A stretch of DNA of 42,912 nt, taken from assembly GCF_001194135.2 (NCBI RefSeq), contig NC_068987.1, forward strand, positions 4,361,500-4,404,411, in the 5' to 3' direction. A program made the position numbers and the translations under genes. This document shows positions 3,716 to 36,440 of the stretch, piece by piece; positions within the stretch are counted from its first letter, which is position 1, and the number at the start of each line of letters is the position of its first letter. The stretch is from Octopus bimaculoides (lineage: Eukaryota). The notes beneath the pieces are model-generated. The model was not told the DNA's origin, did no database searches, and saw only the letters and a program-made list of their open reading frames with translations.

Positions 3716-3860
3716 GGCAGTCCCTACATAGCACTAAAGCAACGTGAAATGAAGTGTTTTGGTCAAGAACATAACACACCGACCGACCCGGAAATCGAAC
3801 CCACGACCTATCGATCTTGAGCGCAACACCCCAACGCCCAGGCAACACGTCTTCACCATT
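3716..3860 (-). mobile_element. SINE family B (CORE-like), 5' portion
   Basis: Reverse complement has the B-box GGTTCGATTTCC and TTGACCAAAACACTTCATTTCACGTTGCT, shared with the 8425 and 12253 copies. Confidence 0.75.
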
Positions 3861-5484: not shown

Positions 5485-5652
5485 CCTGAACGTGTCCGTT
5501 GCAAGATTAAACTCATTTTAAGCTGAGTGTAGTGGAGCAGCATAATATGAAGTGATTCTTAAGGACACTATGTACCGCCCAGCCCAAGTATCGAACTCAA
5601 GACCTAATGATAGTGAGCCCAAGACTCTAACCATTAAACCATGCACCTTCAT
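5485..5652 (-). mobile_element. SINE family B, degenerate
   Basis: CTCATTTT..GCTGAGTG..GTGGAGCA...ATGAAGTG...TCGAAC...AACCATTAAACCATGCACCTTCA is the reverse of the family B head plus CORE. Confidence 0.6.
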
Positions 5653-8010: not shown

Positions 8011-8035
8011 AATTGAAACAATTAAAACAGACATA

Positions 8036-8262
8036 ACATGGCAGTCCTGGTTTAGGATGAATGTAATTTAGGATGCTGTAATTTAGCCCCAGGAGACATT
8101 GTCTCCAGCTGGCTATACGACAGGATCTGTGTCCTTATATTTTCGAACAAGGGAATCTAGCACCCCTCATTCAGCTCAATGCAATATCTGTTTTGTCCCA
8201 GCAGACGATGTCTCCTGGGGCTAAATTACAGCAACATTCGTCCTAAACCAGGACTGCCATGT
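8036..8262. mobile_element. MITE with roughly 70-bp TIRs and TA TSD (Tc1/mariner-type)
   Basis: ACATGGCAGTCCTGGTTTAGGATGAATGT...GCTGTAATTTAGCCCCAGGAGACATTGTCT is inverted at 8199-8262; TA at 8034-8035 and 8263-8264. Confidence 0.85.
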
Positions 8263-8424
8263 TATGTTGGCAAACAGTCTTTACTACAAAGTACTGTTGC
8301 TGAATATCTCCTGTTATGAAATTTACAAATAGTAATTTTCTAAGTCTGATATAGTTATTTGGGACAGAAAAGAAAGCAAAGTATAACTATTGAGGTCAGC
8401 TACGCTGTAGATGTGAACATTTTT

Positions 8425-8652
8425 GTGGAGGCGCGTGGCTTAGTGGTTAGGGTGTCAGCATCATAATCGTAAGATTGCGGTTTCGATTCCTGGACCGGGT
8501 GACGCTTTGTGTTCTTGAGCAAAACACTTCATTTCACGTTGCTCCAGTCCACTCAGCTGGCAAAAATGAGTAACGGTGCGATGGACTGGCGTCCCGTCCA
8601 CCTGGGGAACACATACGTCATTGAAACCGTGAAACCGGGCCCATGAGCCTGG
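8425..8652 (+). mobile_element. SINE family B (CORE-like), young, 3' end truncated
   Basis: A-box TGGCTTAGTGG, B-box GGTTTCGATTCC and CORE-like body. Nearly identical to 12253-12519 but lacks the final CTAGGCTTTAAAAGGGCGCATTT. Confidence 0.9.
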
Positions 8653-8662
8653 GAGGTTCATA

Positions 8663-8720
8663 GCCATGATCGTCTAGTGGTTAGGACCCCACGTTGTGGC
8701 CGTGGTAACCCAGGTTCGAA
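8663..8720 (+). pseudogene. tRNA-His-GTG: tRNA-His(GTG) 5' fragment truncated in the T-loop
   Basis: GCCATGATCGTCTAGTGGTTAGGACCCCACGTTGTGGCCGTGGTAACCCAGGTTCGAA. D-stem GTC/GAC, anticodon stem CCACG/CGTGG, anticodon GTG at 8696-8698. Matches invertebrate tRNA-His except one acceptor-stem base; the 3' T-stem and acceptor strand are missing. Confidence 0.9.
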
Positions 8721-8968
8721 CAAGGAGTACTGTCGTAACCTGTTGCGGCGTTTGCGGGATGCAGTTCGTCAGAATTACATGCATCCAGTGAGTGGCGACT
8801 CCATCAGGACAACACATCTGCCCATTAGGCACAGCCCCTGCAGCAGTTTTCGGCCAAACACAACACTCCCTGTGTCCCACAACCACCATATCCCCCAGAT
8901 CTTGCCCCTTTGCGACCTTTGCCTCTGTTCAAAAATCAAATCCCATTTGATGGAACCCGTTTTACACT
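8721..8968 (+). pseudogene. mariner (DD34D) transposase catalytic-domain relic
   Basis: NKEYCRNLLRRLRDAVRQ / LHASSEWRLHQDNTSAH*AQPLQQFSAKHNTPCVPQPPYPPDLAP / CDLCLCSKIKSHL. There are 34 residues between the D of HQDN and the D of PCD; frameshifts and a stop. Confidence 0.85.
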
Positions 8969-8988
8969 TGAGTGGACTAGAACATCGG

Positions 8989-9104
8989 TGAAACGAAGTG
9001 TTTTGCCCAAGAACTCAACGCACCGCCTGGTCGGCGGGATTGAAACTATAATCGTTACAATCGTGCGCAGAACACCCAAACCACTAAACCACGTGCCTTC
9101 ACTG
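8989..9104 (-). mobile_element. SINE family B head, degenerate
   Basis: GTGAAACGAAGTGTTTTGCCCAAGAAC...AACCACTAAACCACGTGCCTTCA is the reverse of the family B 5' end. Confidence 0.65.
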
Positions 9105-9454
9105 ATTACGATTTCTACTGAATCAAATTCTTCCTCTCGACGCTGCTGATGTGATTCAAAAGCAAACACGGCGATCTCGTGACAATAGCAGACAAAGACA
9201 ATAGACAGAGTTAAACGACAGCCAGGTATTTCCTTCATTTTACTCGAACGCATCGATTTTGTTGATTCAAAGGAGGCAGAAGAAGACTGCCAGAGCGTTG
9301 AAGAAAATGCTTTCTAGTAAATATATAGTTACGGTTCAAATCCCGTTAAGGTCAGCTTCACCTTTCTCTTTTCTAAGAACAAGAAAATAAAAAAATAAAT
9401 ACCGAGTGTGATGGCAGAAAACACTCGTGACCATATTTAGACGCACCCGAGAGT

Positions 9455-9655
9455 GGCGATCTGGCAGAATCGTTTGCACACCGGGAGATGCTTAGCGGTA
9501 TTTCGTCTGTCGTTACGTTCTGAGTTCAAATTCCGCCGAGGTCGACTTTACCTTTCATCCTTCCGGGGTCGATTAAATAAATACCAGTTACGCACTGGTG
9601 TCCTTGTTTGTCCCCTCTATGTTTTGCCCCCTGTTGACAATGAAATAAATATTTA
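9455..9655 (+). mobile_element. SINE family A
   Basis: A-box TGGCAGAATCG, B-box GAGTTCAAATTCC and central GGTCGACTTTACCTTTCATCCTTCCGGGGTCGAT..AATAAATACCAG. Confidence 0.85.
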
Positions 9656-10758: not shown

Positions 10759-11010
10759 GTGGAGGCATGTGGTTTAGTGGTTAGAGGTGTTAGACGCCTG
10801 ATTGCAAGGTTGTTGTTTCGATTCCTGGACCAGGCGATGTGTTGTGTTCTTGAGCAAAACACTTCATTTCACGTTGCTCCAGTCCACTCAGCTGACAAAA
10901 ATGAGGAACCCTGTGACGGACCGGCGTTCGGTCCCGGGGAAAATATATGCACCACAGAAACTAGGAAACCGGCCCTTTGAGCCTATGTGACTCAGGATGG
11001 GACTTTTTAT
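10759..11010 (+). mobile_element. SINE family B (related 3' end variant)
   Basis: Same head and CORE (TTGAGCAAAACACTTCATTTCACGTTGCTCCAGTCCACTCAGCTG); diverged 3' part. Confidence 0.8.
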
Positions 11011-11141
11011 CCACTATCCTAACAACCTAACCCTAAACGAACCAGTGCGGGAGCAGAAGGGTAGCAACCGATGTCGTTGAATGCTCGAAATCAGGTGTAG
11101 ATAGACAACCGACAACTGATGAAGGGTCCTTTCTCTGTGTT

Positions 11142-11485: not shown

Positions 11486-11984
11486 NNNNNNNNNNNNNNN
11501 NNNNNNNNNNNNNNNNNNNNNNNNNNNNNNNNNNNNNNNNNNNNNNNNNNNNNNNNNNNNNNNNNNNNNNNNNNNNNNNNNNNNNNNNNNNNNNNNNNNN
11601 NNNNNNNNNNNNNNNNNNNNNNNNNNNNNNNNNNNNNNNNNNNNNNNNNNNNNNNNNNNNNNNNNNNNNNNNNNNNNNNNNNNNNNNNNNNNNNNNNNNN
11701 NNNNNNNNNNNNNNNNNNNNNNNNNNNNNNNNNNNNNNNNNNNNNNNNNNNNNNNNNNNNNNNNNNNNNNNNNNNNNNNNNNNNNNNNNNNNNNNNNNNN
11801 NNNNNNNNNNNNNNNNNNNNNNNNNNNNNNNNNNNNNNNNNNNNNNNNNNNNNNNNNNNNNNNNNNNNNNNNNNNNNNNNNNNNNNNNNNNNNNNNNNNN
11901 NNNNNNNNNNNNNNNNNNNNNNNNNNNNNNNNNNNNNNNNNNNNNNNNNNNNNNNNNNNNNNNNNNNNNNNNNNNNNNNNNNNN

Positions 11985-12148: not shown

Positions 12149-12252
12149 TAATTTACGAATGTCCATAGGTCCGCCGTACTCAGGGGCACCAACTCACGAT
12201 AGCTAACCGTTTTTTTTTCTTTTCTTTTATCACACTATCATACCACTGACTT

Positions 12253-12519
12253 GTGGAGGCGCGTGGCTAAGTGGTTAGGGTGTCAGCACCATGATCGAAA
12301 GATTGTGGTTTCGACTCCTGGACCGGGCGACGCGTTGTGTTGTTGAGCAAAACACTTCATTTCACGTTGCTCCAGTCCACTCAGCTGGCAAATATGAGTA
12401 ACGCTGCGATGGACTGGCGTCCTGTCCAGCTGGGGAACACAAACGCCATGGAAACCGGGAAGCCGGGCCCATGAGCCTGGCTAGGCTTTAAAAGGGCGCA
12501 TTTAAATTATATTTAAATT
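12253..12519 (+). mobile_element. Full-length young SINE family B (CORE-like) with 13-bp TSD
   Basis: TSD ATACCACTGACTT at 12240-12252 and 12520-12532; A/B boxes; short TTTAAATTA tandem tail. Confidence 0.95.
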
Positions 12520-12581
12520 ATACCACTGACTTATGGTATGGACACATTGGATAGCTACTTGGAGGCCCCACGAGTCAATTC

Positions 12582-17417: not shown

Positions 17418-17759
17418 CATGTATTTATGTATGTATATATATACATGTATCTTGTATGTTTATAAGATCATTGTTTGACTATATACACACACACGAAATC
17501 CTGTGTATATATTTGTGTGTGGGGGGGTGTTTCCATGTTGGATCTTGTGAGTTTTACCTGTTTTATGTTCAATGTTCCACACATATATATATATACACGG
17601 ACCAGACTACCGGATGTTGTCACGCACTGCTGGTCACAATGCGCTTCCTCGAGTTGTTGTGGCTTTCGTATGATGCCATCCCAGTGACGAAGCGGGACGG
17701 GCCAACGTTGCCCGTTAGTATAACGTCAATCCGTTTCTTCATTTACAACGGAGTGGAGT

Positions 17760-17843
17760 GGAGTGTTTTGCTTAAGAACACAGTGCATCACCAATTTGGG
17801 AATCGAAACCACGGTCTGGCGATCTTAATCGCTGAGCTACACG

Positions 17844-18542: not shown

Positions 18543-18757
18543 AGGCGGCGAGCTGGCAGAATCGTTAGCGCGCTGGACGAAATGCTTAGCGGTATTTTGT
18601 GCACCTTTATGTTCTGAGTTCAAATTCCGCCGAGGTCGACTTTGTCTTTCATCCTTTCGGGGGGCGTCGATGAAATAAGTACCAGTTACGTACTGGGTCG
18701 ATATAATCTACTAACCCCCTTCTCCCAAATGCCTTATACCTATAGTAGAAATAATTG
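18543..18757 (+). mobile_element. SINE family A (1st of tandem trio)
   Basis: Full head, central domain and TAGTAGAAA tail; preceded by (TAT)n. Confidence 0.9.
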
Positions 18758-18780: not shown

Positions 18781-18996
18781 GGGCGAGCTGGCAGAAACGT
18801 TAGCATGCCGGACAAAAGGCTTAGCGGTATTTCGTCCGTCTTTACGTTCTGAATTCAAATTCCGCCGAGGTTGACTTTGCCTTTCATCCTTTCGGGGTCG
18901 ATAAGTTAAGTACCAGTTGAACACTGGAATTGAGGTTATCGTTTATCCCCCACCCCTAAAAATGAGTGGCCCTTGCTAAAATTTGAACCAATATTA
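18781..18996 (+). mobile_element. SINE family A (2nd of tandem trio)
   Basis: GGCGAGCTGGCAGAAACGTTAGC...GGGGTCGATAAGTTAAGTACCAG...AAATTTGAACCAATATT. Confidence 0.9.
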
Positions 18997-24704: not shown

Positions 24705-24897
24705 TATTAGGGGGGAGGGGGGGGTCAGTCGATTAGATCGACCTCAGTATGCAACTGGTACTTAATTTATCGACCCCGAAAGGATGAAAGGCAAAATCGA
24801 CCTCGGCGGAATTTGAACTCAGAACGTAGCGGCAGACGAAATACCGCCAAGCATTTCGCCCGGCGCGCTAACGGTCCTGCCAGCTCGTCGCCGCCTT
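24705..24897 (-). mobile_element. SINE family A, young, inverted relative to 24510-24665
   Basis: CAGTCGATTAGATCGACC..CAGTATGCAACTGGTACTTAATTTATCGACCCCGAAAGGATGAAAGGC...CTGCCAGCTCG. Confidence 0.9.
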
Positions 24898-25865: not shown

Positions 25866-26368
25866 GTTAAATAAATAAAACGAGGCTGAAAGGTTTTGGG
25901 GTCATAAGTCTACGTGGATCATAGCTGCCCTTAGTTAAACGGCATCATTCTTGATTACGATCGCAAGTGAAGGAGTCTCTATACTTGGTCGACTTGTTAA
26001 AAATAGCAGCCGAATCCCTCAAGCAGCACCTTACCGCCTTTATAAAAGGTACATTAGATATTGTGATACTTATAAAATGAGACGAAATGGTCATAGGTCT
26101 GCTCTATCAGAGCTGGCTTGGGGGTTAAAAAGGGGAAGAGAAAGAAAAAAACAGAACACCGCCTCCATCATATATATAATGTTGTGGAGTCTGTTGTCGT
26201 GAACGACAAATGAGAGTTCCGCCACTTGTTGCTGAACAAGCTGCTCAGGGGATTTGCTTATAGTGTTTATGTTGTACATTAAGCTCTCACTCCTTCTATC
26301 AAGTGTCAATAACAAAACTCTCGGTCCTTGAGTCACTCTGCTGATTGCTACACACACACACACACATA

Positions 26369-26770
26369 GGCGCAGGAGTGGCTGTGAGGTAAGTAGCTTG
26401 CTTACCAACCACATGATTCCGGGTTCAGTACCACTGCATGGCACCTTGCGCAAGTGTCTTCTACTGTAGCCTCGGGCCAACCAAAGCTTTGTGAGTGGAT
26501 TTGGTAGACGGAAACTGAAAGAAGCCTGTCGTATATATGTATATGTATATGTATATATATATGTATATTTGTGTGTCTATGTTTGTCTCCCCACCATCGC
26601 TTGACAACCGATGTTGGTGTGTTTACGTCCCCGTAACTAGCTCTTCGGCAAAAGAGACCGATAGAATAAGTACTAGGCTTACAAAACAATAAGTCCCAGG
26701 GGTCGATTTGTTCGACTAAAGGCGGTGCTCCAGCATGGCCGCAGTCAAATGACTGAAACAAGTAAAAGAA
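26369..26770 (+). mobile_element. SINE family C, full length, young
   Basis: Complete head (GGCGCAGGAGTGGCTGTGAGGTAAGTAGC), internal (TA/TG)n and 3' end GACTGAAACAAGTAAAAGA; sits directly after a (CA)n tract. Confidence 0.95.
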
Positions 26771-36221: not shown

Positions 36222-36440
36222 AGGGCAGCGAGCTGGCAGAATCGTTAGCACTCCAGACAAAATGCTTAACGGCATTTCGTCCGTCTTGACTTTCTGAGTT
36301 CGAATTCCGCCGAGGTCGATTTTACTTTTTATCGTTCCGGGGTCGATAAAATAAGTACCAGTTGAAGACTGGAGTCGAGGCAACTGACTTGCCCCCTCTC
36401 CCGAACTTGGTGGCCTTATGCCAAAATTTGACACCGATAT
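36222..36440 (+). mobile_element. SINE family A, full length
   Basis: GCGAGCTGGCAGAATCGTTAGC...GAGTTCGAATTCCGCCGAGGTCGA...AAAATTTGACACCGATATT. Confidence 0.9.

What the first reader, a model, noticed from the sequence alone, without database searches (positions are those of the whole stretch)
8654..8745. tRNA-His 5' fragment cut at the T-loop, fused between a SINE and a mariner relic (tailless-retropseudogene-like)
Seen: 58 nt of an almost perfect tRNA-His(GTG) stops at GGTTCGAA, has no poly(A) tail, and joins directly to mariner codons (AAC AAG GAG TAC, NKEY). An imperfect 9-bp direct repeat brackets it: AGGTTCATA (8654-8662) and AGGTTCGAA (8712-8720), the second being the tRNA's own T-arm. 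The upstream family B SINE loses its last ~25 nt at the same spot. Known: tailless retropseudogenes, described mainly in mammals, arise when a LINE RT primes internally on structured RNAs using target microhomology. Inference: this is such an event in a mollusc-like genome, or a new tRNA-His-headed chimeric SINE with a mariner-derived body, or a deletion junction. The left repeat could also be a diverged SINE tail.
Basis: partly seen in the sequence, partly recalled or inferred. Interest (0 to 1): 0.7.

Follow-up and report, generated by a model that had tools for sequence, protein, structure and literature searches.

The report
Dead tRNA-His fragment at repeat junction
A 58-base front piece of a histidine tRNA sits as a lone, non-functional patch between a broken SINE and a decayed mariner transposon; it was probably copied from RNA when a DNA break was sealed, and nothing here shows a new mobile-element family.

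Summary
Window 8663-8720 matches 57 of 58 bases of an intact eukaryotic tRNA-His(GTG) gene. It starts at tRNA position +1, stops in the T-loop (canonical A59) and has no A-tail. It joins a mariner transposase relic directly at the codons NKEY. The SINE upstream lacks its last ~28-30 nt and its 3' target-site duplication (TSD).

Three tailless-retropseudogene hallmarks are met: complete 5' end, truncation in a loop, no tail. The defining TSD is not. The 7/9 repeat lies wholly inside the tRNA, is only marginally above chance, and is not followed by the rest of the SINE. There is no A-rich target.

No second copy of either junction was found in the window or in any searchable collection. The host genome itself could not be searched, so the new-SINE idea is untested and unsupported.

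Best reading: a one-off patch of tRNA-His at a deletion or rearrangement junction, most likely reverse-transcribed. A DNA-level remnant of a resident tRNA-His gene remains a serious rival.

Ordinary genome debris; low interest unless a genome-wide census finds many such fragments.

The parts
8425..8660 (+). tRNA-derived SINE copy ('family B'). Its 5' end is complete. Its 3' tail (~28-30 nt) and 3' TSD are missing.
   Evidence: 92% identical over 230 nt to the copy at 12251-12480 and 79% to the copy at 10759-10984. In the alignment homology fades after ..GAGCCTGG GAGGTTCA, while the full copy at 12251 runs on through ..AAAAGGGCGCATTTAAATTATATTTAAATT to a perfect 13-bp TSD, ATACCACTGACTT. No match to the focal 5' flank was found downstream.
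8661..8662 (+). Two bases (TA) that cannot be assigned. They could be the end of the SINE, non-templated bases, or the tRNA leader/flank.
   Evidence: Alignment of SINE copies. The intact gene on L001 also has ..TATAA just before +1.
8663..8720 (+). tRNA-His(GTG) 5' fragment, canonical positions 1-59: acceptor 5' strand, D-arm, anticodon arm, variable loop, T-stem 5' strand and T-loop T54-A59. The last two A's (8719-8720) could equally be the mariner AAC codon, so the tRNA part is at minimum 8663-8718 (to G57).
   Evidence: 57/58 identical to the intact gene on L001, with identity lost immediately afterwards. Typed His/GTG by ARAGORN when completed in silico. Partial Rfam tRNA match. No other copy in the window.
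8719..8963 (+). Mariner (Tc1/mariner, PF01359) transposase relic, from ..NKEY.. to ..PPYPPDLAP..KIKSHL..GTRF. It is dead: at least 3 frameshifts and 1 in-frame stop.
   Evidence: E=1.9e-13 to P0001. BLASTP/tblastn alignments. Frame map (frame 3, then 2, then 3, then 2, with TAG inside ..SAH*AQ..). No mariner similarity was detectable left of the SINE or, above control level, right of 9103.
8964..9102 (-). Second SINE copy in inverted orientation. Its 5' end is complete and it is cut in mid-core (~140 of ~270 nt), abutting the mariner relic. The two SINEs have heads outward and broken tails inward.
   Evidence: 76-79% identity to the family B copies over SINE positions ~6-136. Alignment A2 shows homology ending at ..CCACTCAAGTG. 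Inverted-repeat pairs I2, I16 and I18. No supported TSD.

Best explanation
This is a single, dead patch of tRNA-His sequence (positions 1 to 57-59) at a rearrangement junction. An event removed the SINE's 3' tail with its TSD, whatever lay between, and the 5' half of an already decayed mariner. The two broken ends were sealed with a 56-58-nt copy of tRNA-His between them.

The patch most likely came from RNA. A reverse transcriptase began copying tRNA-His inside the T-loop, at or just 5' of A58, and ran to the RNA's 5' end. The copying could have started by internal priming on a DNA end, by a template jump, or on a T-loop-cleaved tRNA fragment. The cDNA was then joined to the SINE-side end.

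Shown: the anatomy, the identity of the three pieces, their breakpoints, and the absence of a tail and of a TSD. Inferred: the RNA origin, the single-event history, and the enzyme (a LINE reverse transcriptase or break-repair capture). The piece has no function. It lacks the 3' third of the tRNA and cannot fold as a tRNA.
For: 1. The 5' boundary lies within 0-2 nt of tRNA +1. This is expected if an RNA was copied to its end and is a coincidence for a random DNA break.
2. The 3' boundary is in the single-stranded T-loop at G57-A59. This is the class of site where tailless retropseudogenes end (PMC5322556). By established knowledge it lies next to m1A58, which blocks reverse transcriptases, and it is where tRF-3 cleavage occurs.
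3. There is no tail, and microhomology at the mariner junction is at most 2 nt (AA).
4. The fragment carries 1 change in 58 nt, at a CpG, whereas the adjoining mariner has at least 3 frameshifts and a stop in 245 nt. So the patch is younger than the mariner's decay.
5. The SINE's tail and 3' TSD, and the mariner's 5' half, are absent on both sides. A deletion or rearrangement is therefore required whatever the origin of the patch, and one event with filler is the most economical history.
6. Normal copies of the same SINE in the window have full tails and a 13-bp TSD, so the focal junction is not how this SINE normally ends.
7. Truncated tRNA pieces co-inserted by LINE machinery are documented in mammals (PMC5322556; bioRxiv 10.1101/2025.02.02.635956).
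Against: - Base -1 is A, not the G(-1) that mature eukaryotic tRNA-His carries (established knowledge: Thg1 adds it after transcription). An A at -1 is what a genomic tRNA-His flank looks like; L001 also has A there. This fits a DNA origin, or an RNA intermediate that was not fully mature.
- The SINE tail is variable and only two other full copies are available. The SINE/tRNA boundary could in principle lie up to ~12 nt upstream of +1, which would weaken the 'exact 5' end' argument.
- There is only one locus and no empty site, no reads, and no LINE relic in the window.
- No TSD of any kind supports TPRT.
Confidence: 0.5

Rival explanations
1. DNA-level remnant or DNA-templated filler. Either a tRNA-His gene once stood here and was trimmed by two unrelated breakpoints (a SINE-side rearrangement just upstream of +1 and a deletion from the T-loop into the mariner), or a stretch of a tRNA-His gene elsewhere was copied in as filler DNA during break repair. 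No reverse transcription is involved.
For: Base -1 is A and the bases before +1 (..CATA) resemble the A/T-rich flank of the intact gene on L001 (..TATAA). There is no G(-1). The locus shows another plain truncation junction (inverted SINE cut in mid-core against the mariner), so deletions clearly happened here. No TSD or tail points to retroposition.
Against: It needs a breakpoint within 0-2 nt (at most ~12 nt) of +1 by coincidence, plus a second one in the T-loop. There is no other tRNA gene or tRNA-gene flank in 42.9 kb. The fragment is much less decayed than the mariner beside it.
Confidence: 0.27
2. Classical tailless retropseudogene. A LINE endonuclease nicked the SINE tail at AGGTTCATA, the tRNA's T-arm AGGUUCGAA annealed to the nicked strand and primed reverse transcription, and a 9-bp TSD resulted.
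For: Complete 5' end, loop truncation and no tail. The anchored 7/9 repeat (6/6 perfect AGGTTC) is rare by chance, at 0.26% of complex positions. Target/RNA complementarity of 2-18 nt is the family's signature (PMC5322556).
Against: - The right repeat has the tRNA's sequence, not the target's. After TPRT both copies should carry the target sequence, so two later substitutions in 9 nt would be needed against 1 in 58 in the fragment.
- What follows the right repeat is mariner, not the rest of the SINE tail, so a SINE/mariner junction would already have had to exist at exactly this spot.
- The target is not TT/WAAAAWW and the priming site is not A-rich.
- The family is so far tied to relaxed L1 in therians and anole, with a few cases in maize, and was not found in chicken or platypus.
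Confidence: 0.1
3. A copy, or the founder, of a new composite SINE with a tRNA-His head and a mariner-derived body; or one multi-part chimeric retrocopy (SINE + tRNA + mariner transcript) made by serial template jumps of a LINE reverse transcriptase.
For: All three pieces lie in the same orientation, and both small-RNA-type pieces have complete 5' ends, as in template-switch chimeras (the mechanism is invoked for mollusc SINE modules in PMC4758252). The A box is intact and the B box reads GGTTCGAAC (9 of 11 consensus positions). A T4 run at 8847-8850 could stop Pol III.
Against: - No second copy of the fragment or of the mariner piece in the window.
- Only one distant protein relative of the mariner piece in 5.8 billion proteins.
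- The junction is absent from every searchable collection.
- No LINE-like or A-rich tail, and no TSD around the composite (the best candidate, 13/15, was matched by 52 of 500 shuffles).
- B-box positions C61 and C62 are lost.
- The 3' side ends at an inverted truncated SINE, not at a tail.
Confidence: 0.06
4. Assembly artefact: a chimeric contig or gap-filler error joined a tRNA-His read to repeats.
For: This is a draft assembly with 11 N-gaps and extreme repeat content.
Against: No gap lies within 2.7 kb. The junctions share no long k-mer that could mislead an assembler: at most 6 nt on the left and 2 nt on the right. The flanks are unique in the window.
Confidence: 0.05

Closest known systems
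Tailless retropseudogenes (Schmitz et al. 2004; Noll et al. 2015, PMC5322556)
   Same: A small-RNA copy with a complete 5' end, truncated at the 3' side in a single-stranded loop, with no oligo(A) tail. tRNAs, processed or unprocessed, are classic sources.
   Different: No acceptable TSD. The target does not continue on the far side. The target and priming site are not A-rich. It is a single locus, and the host is not a therian or lizard with relaxed L1.
LINE-1 chimeric insertions that carry truncated tRNAs or other small RNAs (Buzdin-type template-switch chimeras; bioRxiv 10.1101/2025.02.02.635956)
   Same: A tRNA piece fused to other repeat-derived sequence in one block. Truncated tRNAs predominate. 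Same-orientation parts fit template switching or RNA ligation.
   Different: Those chimeras end in a LINE 3' end with poly(A) and have 9-19-bp TSDs. Their tRNA parts are mostly halves (1-37) and antisense to the LINE. Here there is no LINE part, tail or TSD, and the break is at positions 57-59.
Filler or templated insertions at double-strand-break repair junctions, including endonuclease-independent retroelement/cDNA capture (my own knowledge; not checked in the library)
   Same: A short foreign patch sits exactly at a deletion junction, with 0-2 nt of microhomology, no TSD, no tail, and loss of flanking DNA on both sides.
   Different: A tRNA source that starts exactly at +1 is not a described hallmark. 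Nothing here shows that a break occurred, other than the missing SINE tail and mariner half.
Modular ('jigsaw') SINE evolution in molluscs by reverse-transcriptase template switching (PMC4758252)
   Same: A small-RNA-derived head joined to unrelated body sequence, in an invertebrate repeat landscape rich in tRNA-derived SINEs.
   Different: Those are multi-copy families with LINE-related tails. This is a single copy with no tail.

Membership tests
Tailless retropseudogene | Copy of a small RNA with a (nearly) complete 5' end | tested here: met
   8663 is tRNA +1. SINE homology runs to ~8660, leaving 0-2 unassigned bases.
Tailless retropseudogene | 3' truncation at a loop or other single-stranded region, with no oligo(A) tail | tested here: met
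   Ends at T-loop G57-A59 and is followed directly by mariner codons, with no A-run.
Tailless retropseudogene | Flanking target-site duplication, with the target sequence continuing on both sides | tested here: not met
   Only an imperfect 7/9 repeat whose right copy is pure tRNA sequence. There is no match between the left flank and the DNA after the fragment (at most 6/14). Downstream DNA is mariner, not the SINE tail.
Tailless retropseudogene | Target consensus TT/WAAAAWW and A-rich internal priming site | tested here: not met
   The site reads GGG/AGGTTCATA and the RNA end reads GGTTCGAA. Consensus taken from PMC5322556.
Tailless retropseudogene | Recurrent genome-wide copies with shared breakpoints, and an active relaxed LINE partner | not testable with these tools
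   The host genome is not in any searchable collection. There is no LINE ORF in the window.
Template-switch chimeric retrocopy | Parts in the same orientation, with 5' partners complete at their 5' ends | tested here: met
   SINE head at 8425, tRNA +1 at 8663 and the mariner sense strand are all on +.
Template-switch chimeric retrocopy | The 3' partner ends in a poly(A) or LINE tail, and the whole block is flanked by a TSD | tested here: not met
   The mariner piece ends against an inverted truncated SINE. The best flank match (13/15 at 9140-9154) was equalled by 52 of 500 shuffles.
SINE (new tRNA-His-headed family) | Internal Pol III promoter (A and B boxes) | tested here: inconclusive
   The A-box region is intact. 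The B box reads GGTTCGAACAA against the consensus GGTTCGANNCC, so C61/C62 are lost (consensus from established knowledge).
SINE (new tRNA-His-headed family) | Multiple dispersed copies sharing the head-body junction | tested here: inconclusive
   None in the window, the protein database, ORF look-ups, or the metagenome, viral and prokaryote collections. The host genome itself could not be searched.
SINE (new tRNA-His-headed family) | LINE-derived, A-rich or microsatellite 3' tail, plus a TSD | tested here: not met
   No tail and no TSD.
Functional tRNA-His gene | Complete cloverleaf with acceptor and T-stem 3' strands | tested here: not met
   ARAGORN finds 0 genes and Rfam finds nothing at gathering score. 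Identity to the intact gene is lost after position 58 of the fragment.
Tc1/mariner transposon (the right-hand neighbour) | Transposase_1 (PF01359) homology including the ..PPYSPDLAP.. region | tested here: met
   E=1.9e-13 to P0001. 55% identity over 64 aa to P0038.
Tc1/mariner transposon (the right-hand neighbour) | Intact ORF, terminal inverted repeats and a TA duplication | tested here: not met
   Only ~245 nt survive, with at least 3 frameshifts and 1 stop. No mariner similarity in the flanks. Terminal inverted repeats were not sought beyond this.

The most novel reading that the evidence does not exclude
The fragment is a true internally primed ('tailless') retrocopy, or a product of reverse-transcriptase template jumping, in an invertebrate, possibly cephalopod, genome. 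That would mean a LINE reverse transcriptase outside the relaxed-L1 lineages of therians and lizards can start on structured small RNAs at loop positions next to m1A58. Such events could be the raw material from which new tRNA-headed composite SINEs with transposon-derived bodies arise.
Probability: 0.12. Interest if true: 0.55.

Novelty: new member of a known kind. Interest (0 to 1): 0.25.

Why it matters
On its own it matters little: it is one dead 58-nt tRNA scrap in repeat-rich non-coding DNA.

If a genome-wide census showed many such +1-to-T-loop fragments, it would extend tailless or internally primed retroposition beyond vertebrates with relaxed L1. It would also say something about the template requirements of invertebrate LINE reverse transcriptases, and it would give a concrete picture of how SINE heads get fused to new bodies.

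The locus is also a useful caution. A microhomology that lies inside the inserted RNA can look like a target-site duplication.

Tried and rejected
- **TSD for the whole SINE + tRNA + mariner block.** GCTGTAGATGTGA (8402-8416) and GCTGCTGATGTGA (9140-9154) looked promising by eye, but 52 of 500 shuffles and 99 of 408 real 30-mers score as well. Rejected.
- **TSD for the inverted SINE.** AATCAAATCC and AATCAAATTC flank it, but this is no better than shuffles (304 of 1000). Rejected.
- **Mariner continuing after the inverted SINE (9103-9400).** Only weak matches, no better than a reversed-sequence control. Left open, not used.
- **Mariner to the left of the upstream SINE.** Nothing on the + strand. 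There is a weak minus-strand mariner-like match at 8153-8287 that belongs to a separate foldback.
- **tblastn extension 'PGS--NKEY' vs 'PGQTINKEY' into the tRNA T-arm.** Read as coincidence, because the bases after CCAGGT are the tRNA's TCGAA, not mariner.
- **Apparent similarity between the mariner piece and the 3' part of the SINE at 3738-3856 in a MAFFT alignment.** Not supported by BLAST. Rejected.
- **Twin priming.** Rejected on geometry: the SINE heads face outward, and twin priming puts RNA 5' ends in the middle.
- **tRNA as an LTR-retroelement primer.** Rejected: that leaves the tRNA's 3' 18 nt, or tRNA joined to LTR sequence, not positions 1-59 joined to a DNA transposon.
- **Exact-ORF look-ups and collection scans for either junction and for the SINE core.** All negative. 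These collections are unlikely to hold the host genome.
- **Literature search for the SINE core sequence.** No hits.
- **Rfam permissive scan of the whole window.** Only microsatellite-driven miRNA-like noise and no other tRNA-like piece.

Full report
**1. What is there**

Reading 8200-9400 shows, on the + strand, five pieces in a row.

- A tRNA-derived SINE starts at 8425 with GTGGAGGCGCGTGGCTTAGTGG.
- A 58-nt stretch follows at 8663-8720.
- Mariner-like coding sequence starts with AAC AAG GAG TAC.
- A second SINE lies in inverted orientation at about 8964-9102.
- Unique sequence follows.

ARAGORN finds no tRNA gene anywhere in the window. Rfam finds nothing at gathering score. A permissive Rfam scan of the region gives a weak, partial tRNA match covering model positions 10-63 (16.9 bits). 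A permissive scan of the whole window yields only microsatellite-driven noise. The nearest assembly gap is at 11486, so both junctions lie inside contiguous sequence.

**2. Is it tRNA-His?**

I completed the missing T-stem and acceptor 3' strands in silico, and ARAGORN then called tRNA-His(GTG). For a real yardstick I scanned the metagenome collection with the fragment, allowing R at position 4. This recovered one contig, L001, with an intact tRNA-His(GTG) gene.

- The gene has no encoded CCA and is followed by a T5 run.
- The focal fragment matches it at 57/58 positions.
- The single difference is G4->A in a CpG.
- The next 14 bases match only 4/14.

In canonical numbering the fragment ends at T54-T55-C56-G57-A58-A59 of the T-loop. 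The last two A's can equally be read as the first two bases of the mariner's AAC (Asn) codon. So the tRNA-derived part is 1-57 at minimum and 1-59 at maximum, and junction microhomology is at most 2 nt.

**3. The right-hand neighbour**

A frameshift-corrected translation of 8719-8990 hits one protein, P0001 (PF01359, Transposase_1), at E=1.9e-13 and 48% identity. The match begins at that protein's ..TINKEYC.. motif. A second search from P0001 gave 1278 mariner/SETMAR-type relatives, which I used as tblastn probes.

- The relic is confined to 8719-8963.
- It changes frame at least three times and contains one in-frame stop.
- No mariner similarity is detectable to the left of the upstream SINE on the + strand.
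- To the right of 9103 there are only weak matches, no better than a reversed-sequence control.

The mariner is therefore an old fragment whose 5' half is missing at the tRNA junction.

**4. The left-hand neighbour**

The SINE at 8425-8660 is 92% identical to a copy at 12251-12480 and 79% identical to one at 10759-10984. In the three-way alignment the full copy at 12251 continues past the focal breakpoint through ..AAAAGGGCGCATTTAAATTATATTTAAATT and is flanked by a perfect 13-bp TSD, ATACCACTGACTT. The focal copy stops about 28-30 nt short of that.

The focal bases GAGGTTCA (8653-8660) align with the SINE bodies of the other two copies. No match to the focal SINE's 5' flank exists in the next 1.5 kb beyond chance. 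Its 3' TSD is gone together with the tail.

**5. The proposed TSD**

AGGTTCATA and AGGTTCGAA match 7/9, including a perfect 6-mer. A repeat anchored in this way, just before the start and at the very end of a 58-nt segment, occurs at 0.26% of positions in complex sequence and 1.4% window-wide. That is suggestive, but the length was chosen after the fact. There is no classical duplication between the left flank and the DNA after the fragment.

The geometry fails on two counts.

- In target-primed reverse transcription the right copy is the target's own DNA, so both copies should read alike. Here the right copy is perfect tRNA.
- After the right copy the target should continue with the rest of the SINE tail. 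Instead mariner follows.

A pre-existing SINE/mariner junction at exactly this base would have to be assumed.

**6. Other structure in the locus**

The downstream SINE (minus strand) has a complete head at 9102 and is cut in mid-core against the mariner, again without a supported TSD. The two SINEs therefore face each other with heads outward and broken tails inward. This rules out twin priming and shows that the locus has suffered DNA-level truncation.

**7. Is it a family?**

- Neither the tRNA fragment nor the mariner piece has another copy in the window.
- The first protein search found only three candidates in 5.8 billion proteins. So no close paralogue of this mariner piece has been called as an ORF anywhere in that collection.
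- Exact-ORF look-ups for both junction-spanning ORFs found nothing.
- The tRNA-mariner junction is absent from the metagenome, viral and prokaryote-genome collections, and the SINE-tRNA junction from the viral collection.

These collections are unlikely to contain the host genome. The family question is therefore untested rather than refuted, and nothing positive supports it.

**8. Mechanism**

*For an RNA origin*

- The start lies within 0-2 nt of +1.
- The end is in a loop, next to A58. From established knowledge, m1A58 is a hard stop for reverse transcriptases, and the T-loop is the tRF-3 cleavage site.
- There is no tail.
- The fragment is far less decayed than the mariner.

*Against an RNA origin*

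- Base -1 is A. Mature eukaryotic tRNA-His carries an added G(-1) (established knowledge), and the intact gene on L001 also has A at -1 in its DNA.
- The SINE/tRNA boundary could be up to ~12 nt less exact than it looks, because the SINE tail is variable and only two comparators exist.

Whatever the origin, the SINE tail with its TSD and the mariner's 5' half are missing, so a deletion or rearrangement is needed. The most economical history is one break-and-join event with the tRNA copy as the patch. I put this, with RNA as the source, at about 0.5. The rivals are:

| Explanation | Confidence |
|---|---|
| DNA remnant or DNA-templated filler | about 0.27 |
| Textbook tailless retroposition with a 9-bp TSD | about 0.10 |
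| New composite SINE or multi-jump chimera | about 0.06 |
| Misassembly | about 0.05 |

**9. Comparison with known classes**

Tailless retropseudogenes (PMC5322556) are defined by:

- a complete 5' end;
- loop truncation;
- no tail;
- TSDs;
- target/RNA complementarity of 2-18 nt at a TT/WAAAAWW site.

They track relaxed L1 in therians and anole lizard, with a few in maize and none detected in chicken or platypus. The focal piece meets the first three features and fails the TSD and target tests.

L1 chimeras carrying truncated tRNAs have LINE tails and 9-19-bp TSDs, and their tRNA parts are mostly antisense halves. None of that applies here. Module swapping by template switching is accepted for mollusc SINEs (PMC4758252), but it concerns multi-copy families. 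The piece works most like a captured cDNA or filler at a repair junction. That comparison rests on my own knowledge.

**10. Verdict**

The kind of feature is ordinary: a dead tRNA-derived fragment at a repeat junction. Interest is low unless a genome-wide census shows that it is one of many.

Noticed in passing
window 8031-8104 and 8203-8267: A foldback: two ~70-nt arms that are 97% complementary, separated by ~98 nt. The arms carry weak mariner-like coding similarity (..NLAPGD.., minus strand 8153-8287, E~0.1 to several PF01359 proteins). It may be an inverted duplication of a mariner fragment or a MITE-like hairpin, about 160 nt upstream of the focal SINE.
   Followed up: partly
window 8964-9102 (minus strand): A SINE copy with a complete 5' head, cut in mid-core (~140 of ~270 nt) directly against the mariner relic. 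It is inverted relative to the upstream SINE (heads outward, broken tails inward) and has no supported TSD. This is a second 3'-truncated Pol III-type element at the same locus.
   Followed up: partly
window 12251-12520 and 10759-11020: Two full-length copies of the same SINE family. The copy at 12251 has a perfect 13-bp TSD (ATACCACTGACTT) and an (ATTTAA)-like tail. This shows what a normal insertion of this family looks like.
   Followed up: yes
window 9455-9600, with copies near 1489-1575, 18547-18696, 18782-18927, 24745-24887, 36228-36376 and others: A different, more abundant short repeat family (83-88% identity between copies) occurs at least 10 times in the window, in both orientations. 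A further repeat at 9748-9895 matches 26366-26526.
   Followed up: no
window 3738-3856, 5511-5651 and 17753-17823 (all minus strand): Diverged SINE copies that share only the tRNA-like head and the conserved core (..GCAAAACACTTC.TTTCAC..) with the focal family, and have different 3' parts. This suggests a SINE superfamily with a shared central domain.
   Followed up: no
whole window: 11 N-gaps totalling 5119 bases, very dense (CT)n, (CA)n, (TA)n, (ACT)n and (GATA)n microsatellites, and no credible protein-coding ORF or LINE ORF of 130 aa or more. The permissive Rfam scan gives about 130 spurious mir-297/466/3149-type hits on the microsatellites.
   Followed up: partly
L001 1144-1215 (minus strand): A metagenome contig (Ga0194135_10233360) carries an intact eukaryote-type tRNA-His(GTG) gene, with A at -1, no encoded CCA and a T5 terminator. 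Its first 58 nt differ from the focal fragment at one base. The organism is unknown.
   Followed up: partly
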